The notes below the pieces were generated by a model. It had not been told where the DNA came from and did no database searches. It saw only the letters and a list, made by a program, of their open reading frames with translations. From positions 1-64,000 of IMG/VR virus record IMGVR_UViG_3300020380_000001: 64,000 nucleotides of DNA; one strand, written 5' to 3'. The position numbers and the translations under genes are program-made. This document shows positions 78-47,662 of the stretch, in pieces; the first letter of the stretch is position 1, and every line of letters starts with the position of its first letter.

Positions 78-311
78 ATGTCAAAATTACTAAAGAAAAT
101 TAAAAACGCGCAAGTAGCTGACAATAACGGCGTTGTAGTTGGCACAGTACACAACGTATATGACAACGAAGGTCAAACAGTAATTGTGTACAAGCTAGTA
201 AACGGTAATGATGACGAAGCCAACTTGAGCTGGTTGCTTTGGAACAATTACTCGTTCACCCGTAACGGCAAAGTACTTGACAATATGAAAATTTTAGCTG
301 CGTCAGTTTAG
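78..311 (+). CDS. hypothetical protein (77 aa)
   Basis: ORF with AAGGT RBS, followed by a terminator; stop is TAG immediately followed by TAA. Confidence 0.75.
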   Translation: MSKLLKKIKNAQVADNNGVVVGTVHNVYDNEGQTVIVYKLVNGNDDEANLSWLLWNNYSFTRNGKVLDNMKILAASV

Positions 312-329
312 TAAATTATCAATTAAAAC

Positions 330-351
330 AAAGCGCCTACGGGCGCTTTTT
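330..351 (+). terminator. rho-independent terminator
   Basis: AAAGCGCC-TACG-GGCGCTTTTT hairpin with U-tract. Confidence 0.85.
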
Positions 352-366
352 CATGCCTGAGTTTCG

Positions 367-918
367 GTGCTAAATAATAAACACAAACGAGGTTTATTAC
401 ACATGGCAGTGAACGGAAAACAGAAGGGCAACTCCTTCGAAAGAACTATATCAAATATGCTCAGTGAACGCTTCTGCGAGCACTTAGGACTCGAGCAAGG
501 GTTTAGACGTAACCCGGACTCAGGAAGCTTCTTTGGGGGTTCTAATAAGTCTAGGGTGGAAACCCACGACACCGACTTCGCTGTTTATGGTGACCTCATT
601 TGTCCACGTTCCTTTATTTTCAGCATTGAATGCAAATCCTACAAAACGCCACCTACTCTAGATTCCATAGCTAAACAGTCAGTTAAGCAGTGGGATACCT
701 GGATTAGTCAAGCCGAGCAAGACGCTGAGATGGGCAATAAAGAGTCCCTACTCGTCGTAAAATATAATCGTACAGAAATCATGTGCTTCTTGAAAAAGAG
801 CTTCCATGCTACTTCGGATTGGAAAGAAATTGAAGGATTCGCCAAATACAAGGACTATATATTAATGAGTGTTACAGATTTCTTATCAGTTTCTGATGAG
901 AAGTTTTTTAAAGAATAA
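367..918 (+). CDS. Holliday junction resolvase-like PD-(D/E)xK nuclease (likely true start ATG ~403)
   Basis: KQKGNSFER...GD...IECK motif typical of Hjc-type resolvases; CTAAATA motif at 370-376 lies inside the extended ORF start. Confidence 0.75.
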   Translation: MLNNKHKRGLLHMAVNGKQKGNSFERTISNMLSERFCEHLGLEQGFRRNPDSGSFFGGSNKSRVETHDTDFAVYGDLICPRSFIFSIECKSYKTPPTLDSIAKQSVKQWDTWISQAEQDAEMGNKESLLVVKYNRTEIMCFLKKSFHATSDWKEIEGFAKYKDYILMSVTDFLSVSDEKFFKE

Positions 919-920
919 AT

Positions 921-2310
921 TTTTAAAACCGTTGGAATTGCTTACGAGCATGGTTAGTACTAGAGGTTAAATTGTCAACGCTACAATCCCTAGTGATGAT
1001 GGATTCCAACGTTAAAAGGCAGCACAGACTTTACACAATACTGACGGCGTGAACGGGTACTAAAGACACCCAAAAACGTGACAAGATTATTAATCAGTGT
1101 GTAAGGTAATGGCAAACTGTGTGGGCCTTTAGTGAGATAGGCACCTCGGTTCTGTTAAGCTTTACACTCGTGTTTAACGGAATATTGGTTGGAGAAGCCA
1201 ACCCGCATTGAAGACGGCATTGAAGAATGCACCGTTTGGATGAGCTTGCGAGTGCCCCGGGCGAATGGGTAACATAGTGGGTGTTTCGTCCGGTGATATG
1301 ACTTATATGGTCAGGTTCCATCGTGCTTGAGTACTACATTACATAGTAAGAAAGAGAGTATAAAACGAACTACCATAACGGACAAGGCCTCAATAACCTT
1401 GGTTTGTATAGTGAAATTAGACGAGCTTAGAACTTAGATAGCTAATAAGGCTATGAGTAATTATGCAATTTACAGAGATTGGAATACCGGATATAAGTTA
1501 GAGGTAAGAGAGGGACTTGTGGTGTTTTTTAACATGCACTAAGATGTCAACTGTCCGTGAGGGCGGTTTCCCGCACTGTACAAAGAAATTTCTACAGTGT
1601 ATGACCCCTTGAAGGTCTGCTTATAAAACTTAAGTAGAACTCAGTGATGGCCTCGCAAGGTAGTTATTACCCTAGTTAGTAATCTTGACGGGTAATCACA
1701 ACGCCTTGGATGTACCACAAAAGGATATCGCTCTGCAAGAAAAAGAGTTCATCATCCGCAACCTTACGGACGCACGTATATGACGCCAAGTCAACGTAGC
1801 AAATGATGAACGGCAACGATAGCTGCTTAATGGCAACCGCGTTGGTCATTAGGCAGTCGCAATACTTGAAACAATACGACATGGGCTTAGACAGAGGGCT
1901 AAGCAGGCGAATTACATAATGTAGCCTATAAGCAAGTCGAAACCATAGTATGTCACTTCTTTAGTTTATTCTAATCCATTACTTTTGTTAAGAAACTATG
2001 CGCTTCCGCCGCAGGGTAATGTGTTAAGGACCTGCTCGAAATTGAGATGTAGTGATCTCAACGTTAGACAGTTATTAGACAGGGGAAAACGAAACTAGCA
2101 TTCTGTATAAAAATGTGATGTTTTAAAGATTTGGTATATTAGTTTTAAACCAGCGTTTGACGCCGAGAGGTTTAGTTGGGGAATAACACAGCTTCTGATT
2201 AAGTTCTTTAGCTTGTGCCGGAGGATGTTGCAGACTGTAATGTTATAGAGTGAACTCACTTAGTTGGGAGGTGATTTATAATACTGCGCATCGTTATGTT
2301 GATACGATTA
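921..2310 (+). ncRNA. candidate large structured non-coding RNA (~1.4 kb); ends approximate
   Basis: No credible ORF; dense nested helices, e.g. 930-938/1003-1011, 1029-1044/1094-1106, 1517-1523/1714-1720, 1747-1755/1803-1811, 1823-1837/1841-1856; G-U wobbles favour the + strand. Confidence 0.65.
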
Positions 2311-2400
2311 GTAAAAAATTAAACGTAAAAAATGAAGTAAAAAATTAAAGTAAAATATTATTTGTAAAGATTAGACTGTAAATTCCGAACCCAGTAAAAG
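2311..2400 (+). repeat. seven GTAAA-initiated A-rich repeats with 12-16 nt period
   Basis: GTAAA at 2311, 2325, 2337, 2350, 2364, 2378, 2394. Confidence 0.75.
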
Positions 2401-2940
2401 AATTCAAAGATAATCGTATTCAACAAACAAACTCATTTAAAACTAGCTGAAAAGTTATGGCATTGGGAAACGAGCACTCGCACTAGTCAATGGTATTCGC
2501 TAGGCTGCACATCCATAAAAATGCAGTAGAGAACGGGGATCGACGGCGACGGAATGTTCTTATTTTTTTGTTTTTTAAGAATTTTTTGTTAATCTAGTTG
2601 TTTAAGGCTTGCCCATATCGGGCGAGCCATAATCTTCTAACCTTGGAATGCCTGCATACACATAATAGTCACTTCGTGCTATTAATATTAATAACAATAA
2701 TTAAAATATAATCAATCATTCGAAATAATTAATAAGAGTTAAGCTATCGATAGATATTATAGACGCAGCAAGTTCCTTGCGAAGTCTACTAATAGCTAGC
2801 GAGTAACGGCAACGGAGTTGCAGGAACATTACTATCATTCATTATTATAAATGATTCATCATATTCTAGGTTGAATATCAGTAAAAATATCTAAGCGGAT
2901 CGGCTAGAACATAGGACGGGATTAATAGGAATTCAGGCAA

Positions 2941-2967
2941 TAAAAAAGGGCCAATGCTATGACCCTT
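2941..2967 (-). terminator. terminator downstream of the gp26-like gene
   Basis: Minus strand AGGGTCA-TAGCAT-TGGCCCT followed by a T-run. Confidence 0.7.
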
Positions 2968-3129
2968 CCTTGTAGTACTCTTTGAGCTTTTTAACTAATT
3001 GCTGCCGTTCTCGGGATGACATCATCCAACATGTTTCGTAACCAAAGCCACCTTGTCCATAAATAGCCAAGTACTGGATTTCATCAGTTAATTTATCTTG
3101 ATTCTTCTCAAGACCCCGAATCATGGCCA

Positions 3130-4059
3130 TTACCTGTTGTGGGTCGCCTGATCCGAGGAGCGCGTAAAAAAACTCATTTGATCGAAGTTAACATCAATAG
3201 TATGTTCGTGCTGGCAGTTTTGGCATTTCGTATCCAATTTACTCTGCACGCCGTGATTATTCATGTCGTCCACCTTTTCCTTTATCTTCGCTGACGATTC
3301 CCTGTCAATTTCCATGAAGAACTCAGTTATAAATTGCGGCTCAGTAACAACGTTGCCAGCAAGAGATACACTCGCAATAGAGCTCATAAGTATGTCTCGG
3401 TTCAACGTAGACATCTCTTTGTACATTTTACTGAATACAGCTAAGCGCTCATCGTCACTTACGCCAGAATCGGGTGATAAAGCACGCAGACTCTTACTTT
3501 CCTTGTAGCCAATATCAAGTATTTTCTTGTATTGACTAAAGTCGTACGGGTGCAACATCACTTCCAGATCACCATCCAACTCTACAACATTAAAGCCCTC
3601 GCCAAAACGTCTAACACTAGACAACACCATATCTAAATCAAGTGTTTTCTTTTGTACATGGCCGCATTTAGGACAAGTTTCGTCAATGTCATGCTCCTTG
3701 CCGTACGAGTTGCGACGGATTTCAGTCATCAACAATCTAATGTCAATGTGTAAAAGCTTGGTTGGGTCACTAATTGCAGGACAGCAACTCTTTATAACCG
3801 AAACAATGCTTTCGCCATTTAGTAAGCCGTCTGGGTTGTTTAGTAAAGTTTCGTCTGAACCTGTCATGGGCTTAATACCCACTTCAAGTTGATCATTATC
3901 TGCTGTGATGAAGCCTTCAGGATAAGCACCGATGTCAGTGCCTAAAAGACGCACCCAGGATTTAGGCTTCCTGAACGCCCCTGCCAAAGGGTTGTTGGCT
4001 GTCATTTGTGTCATTCTGTTACTCCGTTTTAAGATATACGTGTATTTAGTTAAATTCAA
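3130..4059 (-). CDS. gp26: baseplate hub assembly protein, T4 gp26-like (true start likely downstream, MTQMT/MTANN)
   Basis: NPL..FR.PK..V.L N-terminus, LKPMTGSDE..L..PD.LLNG, CxxC motifs typical of gp26-like proteins. Confidence 0.7.
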   Translation of the reverse strand: MNLTKYTYILKRSNRMTQMTANNPLAGAFRKPKSWVRLLGTDIGAYPEGFITADNDQLEVGIKPMTGSDETLLNNPDGLLNGESIVSVIKSCCPAISDPTKLLHIDIRLLMTEIRRNSYGKEHDIDETCPKCGHVQKKTLDLDMVLSSVRRFGEGFNVVELDGDLEVMLHPYDFSQYKKILDIGYKESKSLRALSPDSGVSDDERLAVFSKMYKEMSTLNRDILMSSIASVSLAGNVVTEPQFITEFFMEIDRESSAKIKEKVDDMNNHGVQSKLDTKCQNCQHEHTIDVNFDQMSFFTRSSDQATHNR

Positions 4060-12981: not shown

Positions 12982-12991
12982 CAGTAAACGT

Positions 12992-13062
12992 GGCCCTGAT
13001 TTGGCATAAGTAGCCGGTCTCTAAAACCGCGAAAGTGGGTTCGAATCCCGCCGGGGTCACCA
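12992..13062 (+). tRNA. atypical tRNA with CUA anticodon (amber suppressor / Pyl-like)
   Basis: Acceptor GGCCCTG/CGGGGTC + A + encoded CCA; anticodon arm CGGT-CTCTAAA-ACCG; T-arm GTGGG-TTCGAAT-CCCGC; short D-arm, no U8. Confidence 0.85.
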
Positions 13063-13084
13063 ACCTAATTTACAAGGATATATA

Positions 13085-46521: not shown

Positions 46522-46618
46522 GTAAATTTTGAATCGTAAATTTTGAATCGTAAATTTTGTTTCGTAAATTAGATAGCCGTAAATTATAACAATAAAAATA
46601 AATTAAGAGTATCGTAAA
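46522..46618 (+). repeat. GTAAATT tandem repeats in the ssb leader (14-15 nt period)
   Basis: GTAAATT at 46522, 46536, 46550, 46564, 46579; GTAAAAT at 46614 overlapping the ATG. Confidence 0.85.
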
Positions 46619-47662
46619 ATGCCGGATATTAATGAAATTCGTGCACGTCTACAACGTGCTGCCGCTCAAAAAGACAACCAAGGTTCATCACGTGGACCAA
46701 GCCCACTTTATCGTCACTGGGATGCTCCTGACGATTCCCGTATTGAAGTAAGATTCCTTCCTGATGCAAATGCCGACAACGTCTATTTCTGGCGTGAAAA
46801 GCAAATGATCAAGCTTGAGTTTTCTTCGGTGCTTGGCCAACCGGACTTTAACAAGGGTAAACCTTTTATCGTACAGGTTCCTTGTGTTGAAATGTACAAT
46901 GACGGCAGATCTTGCCCTGTTAGTCGTGAAGTATCATCGTGGTTTAACACTGATATGGATAGCCTAGCACGCAAGTACTGGAAGAAACGTTCTTATATTA
47001 TGCAGGGTTTTGTTTTACAAGATCCAACTAATGAAGAACAGCCGCCTGAGAACCCTATCAGACAATTCAATATTAACTCGCAAATATTCAAGAATGTGCG
47101 CGAGGGACTACTTGACCCTGATATGCTTCACACGCCAACTGACTATAACAACGGTACAAACTTTGTTATAAAGAAAACTAAGAACGGCCAATACGCTGAT
47201 TACACCACGTCAAACTGGTCTCGTAACGAGTCTGCGCTTAGTCAAGAGCACATGGATGCAATTCAGAACTACGAGCTTAAAGATCTGAATACATTGCTTC
47301 CTAAGGTTCCGTCTGACGAGGACTTGTTAATCATTAAAGAAATGTTTGAAGCAAGTGTAAGTGGCGAACCGTATGACCCTTCTCGTTGGGGTGAACACTT
47401 CCGTCCTTATGGATTGAAAACTGAGTCGAACAACTCAGAACAAGGTACTAAACAGGCTCCGTCTACGCCAGCTGCCCCTGCTCAGTCAGCTAAAACAGAC
47501 GATGCTCCTCCGTTTAAACCTTCTACTGCTGAACCACGCCAAGAGTCACGCCCAGCACCTGCTGCAAGCGCTACGCCGGCACCAGCTGCCCCGGCTGCAC
47601 CGTCTAGTTCTGACTCTAGCGTAAATGATATTCTGGCTAAGATCCGTTCTCGCCAAAACTAA
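46619..47662 (+). CDS. gp32: single-stranded DNA-binding protein (T4 gp32-like)
   Basis: RFLPD, VPC..MY....CPV, YWKKRSY...FV..DP, FD...G.NF..K, flexible Pro/Ala tail. Confidence 0.85.
   Translation: MPDINEIRARLQRAAAQKDNQGSSRGPSPLYRHWDAPDDSRIEVRFLPDANADNVYFWREKQMIKLEFSSVLGQPDFNKGKPFIVQVPCVEMYNDGRSCPVSREVSSWFNTDMDSLARKYWKKRSYIMQGFVLQDPTNEEQPPENPIRQFNINSQIFKNVREGLLDPDMLHTPTDYNNGTNFVIKKTKNGQYADYTTSNWSRNESALSQEHMDAIQNYELKDLNTLLPKVPSDEDLLIIKEMFEASVSGEPYDPSRWGEHFRPYGLKTESNNSEQGTKQAPSTPAAPAQSAKTDDAPPFKPSTAEPRQESRPAPAASATPAPAAPAAPSSSDSSVNDILAKIRSRQN

What the first reader, a model, noticed from the sequence alone, without database searches (positions are those of the whole stretch)
921..2310. Candidate giant (~1.4 kb) structured non-coding RNA in an otherwise densely coding jumbo phage
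Seen: this is the only long ORF-free block in 64 kb, and it folds by eye into nested multi-helix domains. Domain 1: CGTTGGAAT 930-938 pairs with ATTCCAACG 1003-1011 and encloses TGCT-TACG-AGCA and ACTAG/CTAGT + ATTGT/ACAAT. Domain 2: AAAGGC 1015-1020/GCCTTT 1125-1130, GCACAG/CTGTGT, and a 13-bp helix 1029-1044/1094-1106 with an AAT bulge. Other helices: GGTTGG-AGAAG-CCAACC (~1187-1203); long-range TTGTGGT 1517-1523/ACCACAA 1714-1720; GTCC-GTGA-GGGC GNRA hairpin (~1553); CACTGTA/TACAGTG; ATTACCC/GGGTAAT; three-way junction closed by GTTCATCAT 1747-1755/ATGATGAAC 1803-1811; 15-bp hairpin 1823-1856; GCTTAG/CTAAGC; TTGAGAT/ATCTCAA; GCC-GAGA-GGT. TTAGACAG recurs at 1887, 2064 and 2075. Non-Watson-Crick pairs are mostly G-U on the + strand, the signature of selection on RNA rather than DNA palindromes. 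Established: phages encode large ornate RNAs of unknown function (GOLLD, ROOL), generally well under 1 kb. Inference: this may be a new or larger class, co-transcribed with the resolvase from the late motif at 370 since no terminator intervenes.
Basis: partly seen in the sequence, partly recalled or inferred. Interest (0 to 1): 0.92.

Follow-up and report, generated by a model that had tools for sequence, protein, structure and literature searches.

The report
New large structured RNA in jumbo phages
The gene-free stretch after the phage's resolvase-like nuclease gene encodes a real, heavily folded non-coding RNA from a family absent from the RNA-family library, and this phage carries an unusually enlarged copy of about 0.8-1.1 kb rather than the proposed 1.4 kb.

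Summary
The ORF-free gap is larger than stated (919-2956) and is not coding under any single stop-codon reassignment. No Rfam 15 family, tRNA or tmRNA matches.

The + strand folds far better than shuffled sequence (z -4.3; - strand -1.0), but only in 921-1262 and 1511-1860. The stretch 1861-2310 is no better than chance.

The decisive evidence is comparative. About 45 related uncultured jumbo-phage contigs carry a roughly 320-nt RNA at the same place and on the same strand, between the PDDEXK nuclease gene and the converging baseplate-hub operon. Its helices and one pseudoknot are strongly supported by compensatory changes: 95-96% of cells pair, against 30-50% in slid controls.

Models built without the window find two of its modules here. 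The 5' domain is at 1188-1251 (20 bits). The H4/H5 module is at 1705-1885 (26 bits, E 3e-7 over all 64 kb). They are separated by about 460 nt of lineage-specific expansion. The canonical pseudoknot module is missing.

A sister haplotype differs at only 6 of 1102 positions in 919-2020, all predicted unpaired, against 4-8% in flanking genes.

Verdict: a real RNA of a new family, in an expanded variant. Function, transcript ends and single-transcript status are untested.

The parts
369..379 (+). GCTAAATAATA, this phage's late-promoter-like motif upstream of the nuclease gene. It is a possible promoter for a nuclease-plus-RNA transcript.
   Evidence: CTAAATA recurs just upstream of about 10 genes in the window and is absent from 919-2956 on both strands. 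Its function as a promoter is inferred.
403..918 (+). It is the syntenic anchor of the RNA.
   Evidence: Pfam PF24608, 82 bits; PHROG 244, RusA-like resolvase. The RNA follows this gene in all family loci.
856..863 (+). ACTATATA inside the 3' end of the nuclease gene. It resembles the (G)ATATATA(G)TAGTA motif that precedes the RNA in relatives and is a possible own promoter.
   Evidence: The motif is conserved right after the nuclease stop codon in most relatives. The match in the window is partial and lies in coding sequence, so this is inference only.
930..1011 (+). Domain 1: a lineage-specific multi-helix domain closed by CGUUGGAAU/AUUCCAACG.
   Evidence: Coordinates verified. It is present in the MFE fold. 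No substitutions against the sister haplotype. No homologue in relatives.
1015..1130 (+). Domain 2: a lineage-specific domain closed by AAAGGC/GCCUUU, with a 13-bp bulged helix 1029-1044/1094-1106.
   Evidence: Segment 921-1135 gives z -2.1 on the + strand and -1.2 on the - strand. No substitutions against the sister haplotype.
1140..1256 (+). Family 5' domain. It comprises a closing helix GGCAC/GUGCC (1140-1144/1252-1256), an extra hairpin 1149-1183, hairpin GGUUGG-AGAAG-CCAACC (1187-1203), P2 CGCA/UGCG (1204-1207/1247-1250), the conserved UUGA (1208-1211), P3 (1212-1237) and the conserved GGAU (1238-1241).
   Evidence: Model R2 (25 relatives, window not included) scores 1188-1251 at 20.2 bits, E 0.008 over the whole 64-kb window, with the next hit at 12.4 bits. 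R1 also finds it. The closing helix is assigned by eye.
1257..1718 (+). Lineage-specific expansion of about 460 nt at the site between the 5' domain and H4. It contains UUGUGGU/ACCACAA (1517-1523/1714-1720), the GUGA hairpin at 1553-1564, and hairpins at 1574-1599, 1616-1638 and 1666-1696.
   Evidence: One clade of relatives ('group A': L008, L009, L012, L056, L095, L096) has a different expansion of about 230 nt at the same site. 1511-1722 gives z -2.9; 1263-1510 gives z about 0. Only 3 substitutions, all in predicted unpaired positions.
1726..1821 (+). H4: stem UAUCG/CGAUA (1726-1730/1817-1821) and inner UG/CA pairs. It carries the family's most conserved loop (CUCUGcaAGAAAAAG...CAA), interrupted by a 68-nt three-way junction (1746-1813; stem GUUCAUCAU/AUGAUGAAC).
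   Evidence: R3 alignment, R1 alignment, and blastn of the loop motif to L008, 24 of 28 identical.
1823..1862 (+).
   Evidence: R3 gives 26 bits, E 3.2e-7 over 64 kb on both strands, with the next hit at 9.8 bits. The one substitution (1839) is in the loop.
1863..2020 (+). 3' region. It contains the UACGACAUGG motif shared with relatives (about 1873-1885), hairpin GCUUAG/CUAAGC (1885-1904), a small hairpin (1913-1923) and a tail, CCUAUAAGCAAGUCGAAAC, that resembles the family tail by eye. The canonical H6/H7/pseudoknot module is absent here.
   Evidence: R3 collapses 54 model positions to 3 nt. The segment is still highly conserved, with 2 substitutions, but z is +1.4.
2021..2956 (.). AT-rich non-coding remainder of the gap, probably spacer or regulatory sequence. 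Features: TTAGACAG x2 (2064, 2075); a 12-nt tandem repeat at 2311-2348 with a one-unit indel between haplotypes; T-runs at 2562-2590; a strong hairpin at 2606-2628; and the - strand terminator of the hub operon at about 2939-2970.
   Evidence: Divergence of about 3% including the indel. No folding signal in 2021-2500. Repeats and hairpin folds. No remnant of the 190-210-aa ORF that relatives carry here.

Best explanation
Window positions about 919-2020 encode a + strand, highly structured non-coding RNA. It belongs to a previously uncatalogued family found in a clade of uncultured jumbo phages. The family always sits between the PDDEXK nuclease gene, at the end of a gp46/gp47-like recombination gene cluster, and the converging baseplate-hub operon.

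In most relatives the RNA is a compact fold of about 320 nt. It has a 5' domain (P1-P2-P3 with conserved UUGA/GGAU internal-loop residues), a hairpin H4 with an almost invariant loop (CUCUGAGAAAAAGCAA), a long hairpin H5, an H6/H7 pseudoknot module and a 3' hairpin H8.

The window's phage carries a much enlarged and rearranged version. It has two extra 5' domains (930-1130), the 5' domain at 1140-1256, a roughly 460-nt expansion, H4 with a 68-nt three-way junction inserted in its loop, and H5. It has no canonical pseudoknot module.

Shown: the family and its structure, the homology of two window modules, the strand, and the purifying selection.

Inferred: it acts in trans as a folded RNA. Its invariant loops and junctions would make tertiary contacts or bind a phage or host partner, while its expansions are peripheral, as in other large 'ornate' RNAs such as GOLLD, ROOL and OLE. 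It would be made either by read-through from the late-type motif at 370 or from a TATATA-type motif at the end of the nuclease gene. Its biochemical activity is unknown.
For: 1. No coding potential, even with one stop codon reassigned.
2. Strand-specific excess folding: z -4.3 on the + strand against -1.0 on the - strand.
3. The family has about 45 loci, all on the + strand and all syntenic.
4. Covariation in 11 compact members: 54 pairs, 96% of cells paired against 33-42% in slid controls, and 29 pairs with two-sided changes against 4-11.
5. Covariation in 25 members, 5' domain: 12 of 15 pairs compensatory.
6. Covariation in 21 members, H4-H5-pseudoknot: 95% paired against 30-50%, and 19 of 25 pairs compensatory.
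7. Many conserved G-U pairs that would be A-C mismatches on the other strand.
8. Models built without the window hit it in the right order, strand and place. R3 hits 1705-1885 at 26 bits, E 3e-7 over 64 kb; R2 hits 1188-1251 at 20 bits, the top hit in 64 kb.
9. The sister haplotype has 6 substitutions in 919-2020 against 4-8% in flanking genes. All 6 fall at MFE-unpaired positions, where only 37% of positions are unpaired.
10. Relatives in group A (L008, L009, L012, L056, L095, L096) also have an expansion at the same site, so size variation there is a family trait.
Against: - No transcript data of any kind, so the ends and the single-transcript status are unknown.
- The window copy scores weakly against the compact-member model R1: 12.7 and 10.8 bits, close to the noise seen in an unrelated locus.
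- The window copy lacks the family's pseudoknot module.
- The window-specific domains (930-1130, 1257-1718) have no homologues, so they cannot be tested by covariation. Only two haplotypes exist, and there are no intermediate relatives among 5.8 billion proteins.
- Low divergence could partly reflect a recent recombination tract, because 1-500 is also little diverged.
- 1263-1510 and 1861-2020 show no local folding excess.
- A second, weaker 5'-domain-like motif at about 1606 and a weak promoter-like GATATAAGT at 1489 leave room for a two-unit reading.
Confidence: 0.8

Rival explanations
1. The block is composite rather than one giant RNA. The family RNA would be only about 1140-1950, or even about 1500-1950. 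Domains 1-2 (930-1130) and/or 1257-1500 would be a separate small RNA or a diverged tandem duplicate, and 2020-2956 would be spacer.
For: - Compact relatives need only about 320 nt.
- 1263-1510 has no folding signal.
- A second CCCUUGAgGG-like motif lies at 1606, and GATATAAGT at 1489 resembles the relatives' upstream motif at a family-like distance.
- No homology was found for 919-1140.
Against: - R2 scores the 1188-1251 site and not the 1606 site.
- The distance from the nuclease stop codon to the 5' domain (222 nt) is in line with group A relatives (140-175 nt). Those relatives also have a long insert before H4.
- Conservation is uniform across 919-2020.
- No promoter or terminator consensus occurs inside the block.
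Confidence: 0.3
2. It is a cis-acting 3' untranslated element of the nuclease mRNA, acting as a stabiliser, a processing site or a transcription insulator at a convergent gene junction. It would not be a trans-acting RNA.
For: - It lies directly after the stop codon, and no terminator separates it from the gene.
- In L097 it starts 52 nt or less after the stop codon.
- The arrangement is convergent, with the hub operon's terminator nearby.
Against: - A pseudoknotted multi-domain core of about 320 nt with near-invariant loops, conserved at 50-60% protein identity, is far more than such roles need.
- Relatives have their own conserved upstream motif, distinct from their late-promoter motif GATAAATA.
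Confidence: 0.1
3. It is a DNA-level element, such as a replication origin, a packaging site or a recombination hotspot, at the border of the recombination and structural gene modules.
For: Its position between gene modules; AT-rich flanks and repeats in 2020-2956.
Against: - Folding excess is strand-specific.
- Conserved G-U pairs and compensatory changes maintain single-strand helices and a pseudoknot.
Confidence: 0.04
4. It is a degenerate or ORF-less self-splicing intron or other known ribozyme or RNA (group I or II intron, RNase P, tmRNA, GOLLD, ROOL, OLE).
For: Its size, multi-domain fold, pseudoknot, and peripheral expansions around a conserved core.
Against: - No Rfam 15 match at gathering thresholds in the window or in 9 relatives. 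Only noise appears at E up to 10 in 300-3200.
- ARAGORN finds no tRNA or tmRNA.
- The nuclease ORF is complete and ends before the RNA, and no split gene flanks it.
Confidence: 0.03
5. It is non-functional spacer or a decayed gene whose helices arise by chance.
For: This holds for part of the block. 1861-2310 folds no better than shuffles, and 2021-2956 diverges at about 3% with a variable tandem repeat.
Against: For 919-2020 it is excluded by homology, covariation in relatives, strand asymmetry and roughly 10-fold reduced divergence. No remnant of the relatives' neighbouring ORF is present.
Confidence: 0.02

Closest known systems
GOLLD and ROOL RNAs (large 'ornate' RNAs, often in phages or prophages)
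   Same: A stand-alone non-coding RNA of several hundred nt or more, encoded by phages. It has many helices and pseudoknots supported by covariation, conserved loop and junction sequences, no adjacent regulated gene, and unknown function. My own knowledge plus the abstract of bioRxiv 10.1101/2024.12.08.627333 say these RNAs form RNA-only multimers.
   Different: No sequence or structure match to any Rfam model. Different hosts (uncultured jumbo phages with T4-like baseplate and recombination genes). The core is only about 320 nt, with lineage-specific expansion to about 1 kb. It is not next to tRNA genes. Multimerisation was not tested.
OLE RNA
   Same: A large, highly conserved multi-stem RNA thought to work as a ribonucleoprotein scaffold.
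   Different: OLE is chromosomal in extremophilic Firmicutes and is linked to the oap genes. No Rfam match here, and no conserved protein partner gene stands out. The neighbouring 190-210-aa ORF of relatives is absent from the window.
Group I and group II introns and RNase P RNA (RNAs with a conserved core and variable peripheral expansions)
   Same: The architecture principle: a conserved pseudoknotted core, with insertions tolerated at fixed sites (the P1-to-H4 linker and the H4 loop) that vary from 0 to about 460 nt between lineages.
   Different: No match to their covariance models. The RNA is not inserted in a gene. No intron-encoded protein is present. No catalytic signature was identified.
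phi29 pRNA and T4 'species 1 and 2' stable RNAs
   Same: Phage-encoded stable RNAs that are not tRNAs or mRNAs. pRNA shows that a phage RNA can be a structural part of a machine, in that case the packaging motor (my own knowledge).
   Different: Those RNAs are 120-174 nt and unrelated in sequence. Nothing here links the RNA to the portal or packaging genes.

Membership tests
Any Rfam 15 family (including GOLLD, ROOL, OLE, HEARO, group I/II introns, RNase P, tmRNA, 6S, SRP, riboswitches, self-cleaving ribozymes) | Covariance-model score at or above the family's gathering threshold | tested here: not met
   0 matches in the 64-kb window and in 9 relatives. With E up to 10 on 300-3200, only 4 noise hits appear, none in a relevant family. 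I did not check by name that each listed family is in the library.
tRNA / tmRNA | Cloverleaf or tmRNA detected by ARAGORN | tested here: not met
   0 genes in the window.
Self-splicing intron (group I or II) | Interrupts a gene whose exons flank it, often with an intron-encoded protein | tested here: not met
   The nuclease ORF aligns end to end with relatives and stops at 918. The next gene is on the other strand. No ORF lies inside.
New family: nuclease-downstream RNA of jumbo phages (defined here) | Location and strand: directly downstream of the PDDEXK_15 nuclease gene, same strand, converging on the baseplate-hub operon | tested here: met
   Window: nuclease 403-918 (+), RNA, hub 3130-4059 (-). 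The same arrangement holds in all family loci.
New family: nuclease-downstream RNA of jumbo phages (defined here) | 5' domain: P2 - UUGA - P3 - GGAU.. - P2' inside closing helix P1 | tested here: met
   R2 hits 1188-1251 at 20.2 bits, E 0.008 over 64 kb, the top hit. The P1 equivalent, GGCAC/GUGCC, was assigned by eye only.
New family: nuclease-downstream RNA of jumbo phages (defined here) | H4 hairpin with loop CUCUGAGAAAAAG..CAA, followed by long hairpin H5 and the GUCGC junction | tested here: met
   R3 hits 1705-1885 at 26 bits, E 3.2e-7 over 64 kb. H4 carries a 68-nt insertion.
New family: nuclease-downstream RNA of jumbo phages (defined here) | H6 hairpin, H7 hairpin and the pseudoknot GGCAU/GUGCC | tested here: not met
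   The R3 alignment collapses these 54 model positions to 3 nt in the window. No equivalent was found by eye. The window copy is therefore a divergent member and not a typical one.
New family: nuclease-downstream RNA of jumbo phages (defined here) | 3' hairpin H8 and the tail CUCAUAAUCCAUCAAC | tested here: inconclusive
   No model hit. By eye, a short hairpin at 1913-1923 plus CCUAUAAGCAAGUCGAAAC resembles it.
Large ornate RNAs forming RNA-only multimers (GOLLD/ROOL-like behaviour) | Homo-oligomeric assembly of the folded RNA | not testable with these tools
   Needs in-vitro transcription with native gels or cryo-EM.

The most novel reading that the evidence does not exclude
The whole constrained block (about 919-2020, 1.1 kb) is one transcript. 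That would make it a giant member of a new class of phage RNA whose roughly 320-nt pseudoknotted core is a ribozyme, or the seed of a higher-order RNA or RNP assembly. Lineages would have enlarged this core up to more than three-fold by adding peripheral domains, making it larger than the well-known ornate phage RNAs.
Probability: 0.3. Interest if true: 0.85.

Novelty: new variant of a known kind. Interest (0 to 1): 0.72.

Why it matters
Large structured RNAs of unknown function are rare, and each new class has so far revealed unexpected biology or architecture. This one has unusually clean comparative support. It is confined to a clade of uncultured jumbo phages and has a fixed genomic address next to recombination genes.

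It also shows a natural size series: about 320 nt in compact members, about 550-590 nt in group A relatives (estimated from locus coordinates), and 800-1100 nt in the window. That series marks which parts are core and which are dispensable.

This gives structural biologists a ready set of constructs. It gives phage biologists a candidate essential RNA to test once a member is cultured or the RNA is synthesised.

Tried and rejected
- **Known RNA families:** Rfam at gathering and permissive thresholds, and ARAGORN, found nothing.
- **Cultured phages:** blastn of the window block and of a compact member against 50,697 phage records found no match. The nearest cultured phage with this nuclease, Atu_ph07, has a different gene order and no model hit above noise.
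- **Cellular genomes:** a GTDB genome scan with the H4-loop pattern gave only a chance 18-nt match.
- **Alternative genetic code:** rejected. All six frames are full of all three stop codons.
- **Decayed copy of the relatives' 190-210-aa ORF in 2000-2956:** no tblastn trace.
- **Direct sequence homology of 919-1500, 1860-2400 and 2400-3130 to relatives:** none found. HMMs of group A's own expansion and upstream region do not hit the window.
- **Intermediate relatives of the window lineage:** none exist among 5.8 billion proteins. Identity drops from 98% to at most 60-68%.
- **My first nhmmer seed:** it included the window sequence, so its window hits were circular. MAFFT also mis-aligned the window's H5 to the pseudoknot motif. 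I replaced this with models built without the window (R1-R3).
- **Conserved small ORF starting at the AUCAUGG motif of relatives:** rejected, because the frames and stop codons are inconsistent (by eye).
- **The 1606 CCCCUUGAAGG site as the window's 5' domain:** not scored by R2.
Full report
**What is in the window**

The window is the start of a roughly 306-kb uncultured viral contig, IMGVR_UViG_3300020380_000001. Position 403-918 (+) encodes a PDDEXK_15 putative endonuclease, PF24608, listed in PHROGs as a RusA-like resolvase. Position 3130-4059 (-) encodes a T4 gp26-type baseplate hub, PF12322.

Between them no ORF exceeds 75 aa. It is by far the longest gap in the window; the next are 750 and 547 nt. 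All six frames carry many TAA, TAG and TGA codons, so reassigning any one stop codon does not open a gene.

**Is the folding more than chance?**

For 921-1920 the + strand gives z -4.34 (0 of 20 shuffles as good) and the - strand z -1.03. The signal is uneven.

| Segment | + strand z |
|---|---|
| 921-1135 | -2.1 |
| 1136-1262 | -2.8 |
| 1263-1510 | -0.06 |
| 1511-1722 | -2.9 |
| 1719-1860 | -3.4 |
| 1861-2020 | +1.4 |
| 2021-2310 | -0.3 |

A sliding-window scan agrees.

**Known families**

Rfam 15 gives no match at gathering thresholds in the window or in nine relatives. At E up to 10 on 300-3200 only noise appears. ARAGORN finds no tRNA or tmRNA. blastn against 50,697 phage records finds nothing.

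**Comparative evidence**

Searching viral and metagenome contigs with the nuclease protein gave 98 loci.

In one large clade the gene order is conserved: a gp47-like ORF of about 340 aa, a gp46/SMC-like ORF of about 590 aa, the nuclease, a 480-1200-nt gap, usually an ORF of 190-210 aa on the other strand, and then the hub.

In about 45 of these loci (roughly 25 distinct sequences) the gap holds a conserved element, always on the nuclease strand.

In compact members the element is about 313-326 nt. An alignment of 11 compact members (A4) supports nine helices including a pseudoknot:
- 54 pairs, with 96.0% of cells paired against 33-42% when the partner is slid by 1-3 columns.
- 29 pairs with changes on both sides, against 4-11 in the slid controls.
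- 0 of 500 shuffles reached the observed covariation score.

Wider alignments confirm this. In the 5' domain, 12 of 15 pairs show compensatory changes across 25 sequences. P1 switches between CAGC/GCUG, UAGC/GCUA and CAAC/GUUG. For H4, H5, H7 and the pseudoknot, 95% of cells pair against 30-50% in controls, and 19 of 25 pairs are compensatory across 21 sequences.

Many conserved pairs are G-U, which would be A-C mismatches on the other strand. The folded molecule is therefore the + strand.

Unpaired sequences are nearly invariant: the H4 loop CUCUGAGAAAAAGCAA, the UUGA and GGAU(A)CU sides of the P2/P3 internal loop, GGGUCGCGGCAU, and GGUCAAUG.

**Does the window belong to this family?**

My first nhmmer profile included the window, so I do not use its window hits. 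Three covariance models built only from relatives were searched with filters off.
- R3 (H4-H5-pseudoknot region, 21 sequences) hits 1705-1885 (+) at 26 bits, E 3.2e-7 over the whole 64-kb window on both strands. The next hit is 9.8 bits.
- R2 (5' domain, 25 sequences) hits 1188-1251 (+) at 20.2 bits, E 0.008 over 64 kb. The next hit is 12.4 bits.
- R1 (11 compact members) finds the same two places, but only at 12.7 and 10.8 bits. That is close to the 7-11-bit noise it gives in an unrelated phage locus.

- GGUUGG-AGAAG-CCAACC is the variable hairpin inside P1.
- CGCA/UGCG is P2, and 1212-1237 is P3.
- The 'three-way junction' at 1747-1811 is a 68-nt insertion in the H4 loop, exactly where some relatives insert 1-3 nt.
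- The '15-bp hairpin' at 1823-1856 is H5.

Between the 5' domain and H4 the window has about 460 nt, where compact members have about 20. Group A relatives (L008, L009, L012, L056, L095, L096) have their own conserved, unrelated expansion of about 230 nt at the same site.

The H6/H7/pseudoknot module is missing from the window copy: 54 model positions collapse to 3 nt. The window RNA is therefore a divergent, expanded and rearranged member.

**Selection within the window lineage**

Only two haplotypes exist, 97.8% identical over 400-3200. Flanking genes differ at 4-8% per 250 nt. Position 919-2020 has 6 substitutions in 1102 nt, about 0.5%. Position 2021-2956 has about 3%, plus a 12-nt indel that is one unit of a GTAAAAAATKAA tandem repeat.

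All six substitutions fall at positions unpaired in the MFE fold, and five of them have P(unpaired) of at least 0.88. Only 37% of positions are unpaired, so chance is roughly 0.003. This supports constraint on helices across about 919-2020.

Two caveats apply. The structure is predicted. And 1-500 is also little diverged, so a recombination tract cannot be excluded.

No relatives of intermediate distance exist in the 5.8-billion-protein collection. Identity drops from 98% to at most 60-68%. The window-specific domains (930-1130, 1257-1718) therefore cannot be tested by covariation now.

**Transcription (inference only)**

The phage's late-type motif (G)CTAAATA lies upstream of about ten genes, including the nuclease gene at 370. 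It is absent from 919-2956 on both strands. No terminator-like site lies between 403 and 2956 on the + strand.

In relatives the late motif is GATAAATA. The RNA there is preceded by a different conserved motif, (G)ATATATA(G)TAGTA, placed right after the nuclease stop codon. The window has only ACTATATA at 856-863, inside the gene.

The conserved module downstream of the relatives' RNA reads as a hairpin plus T-run on the - strand. It is probably the hub operon's terminator. The window's equivalent is at about 2939-2970.

**Distribution**

The family was not found in any of these:
- Atu_ph07.
- Cultured phages.
- One genome per GTDB species, scanned with the H4-loop pattern.
- The other nuclease-bearing clades, although some of those have other long gaps.

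**Conclusion**

The finding is real and interesting, but it needs reshaping. It is a new family of structured phage RNA with a core of about 320 nt. The window holds its largest known version.

About 750 nt (1140-1885) is tied to the family by homology. About 1.1 kb (919-2020) is under strong constraint.

The function is unknown. The most likely mode of action is a trans-acting folded RNA or RNP scaffold in the manner of other ornate RNAs. A ribozyme core or a multimeric assembly are the more exciting possibilities that the evidence does not exclude.

Noticed in passing
window 12990-13065 (+): A tRNA-like cloverleaf with a 7-9-bp acceptor stem, a GGGUUCGAAUCCC T-arm and a ...CACCA end. Its anticodon loop, CUCUAAA, would give anticodon CUA, an amber-suppressor type. 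Neither ARAGORN nor Rfam called it.
   Followed up: partly
window 2311-2348: Three tandem copies of GTAAAAAATKAA. The sister haplotype lacks exactly one unit (2325-2336), so copy number varies.
   Followed up: partly
window 2606-2628: A very stable hairpin, GGCUUGCCC-AUAUC-GGGCGAGCC (z -5.3), just after long T-runs at 2562-2590. Its role is unclear; it could be a + strand terminator or a processing site.
   Followed up: partly
window 1887, 2064, 2075: TTAGACAG occurs three times within 200 nt, two of them 11 nt apart. The copies are kept in the sister haplotype. No explanation found.
   Followed up: no
window 2701-2900 (- strand): A 200-nt sliding window gives z -5.2 on the - strand, next to a sigma-70-like TTCGCA-16-TATAAT at 2783-2756. 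Folding 2740-2850 alone gave only z -1.5. It may be a small - strand RNA.
   Followed up: partly
L040 about 2860-2950, and the equivalent in L025, L078, L059, L009, L056 and others: Downstream of the relatives' RNA lies a covarying long hairpin with a conserved loop, CGAAGCGAAGCGAAG, and then a second hairpin. On the - strand it is followed by a T-run, so it is probably the hub operon's terminator. The loop conservation is unusual for a terminator.
   Followed up: partly
L008 7255-7860, L012 7687-8310, L009 7292-7945, L025 1364-1912 and others (- strand): A conserved ORF of 190-210 aa with no Pfam or PHROG match lies between the RNA and the hub gene in most relatives. It is absent, with no remnant, from the window.
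   Followed up: partly
relatives, first about 10-45 nt after the nuclease stop codon (for example L030 719-735, L087 3983-3998): A conserved motif, (G)ATATATA(G)TAGTA, distinct from these phages' late-promoter-like GATAAATA. It is a candidate for a second promoter class or a processing signal.
   Followed up: partly
window 46560-46600: About four tandem copies of CGTAAATTTTGAAT-like units lie upstream of the ORF at 46619.
   Followed up: no
L097 1730-3181; L101 5588-7078: Some relatives carry a purF-like gene (glutamine amidotransferase plus phosphoribosyltransferase) between the gp46-like gene and the nuclease gene.
   Followed up: no
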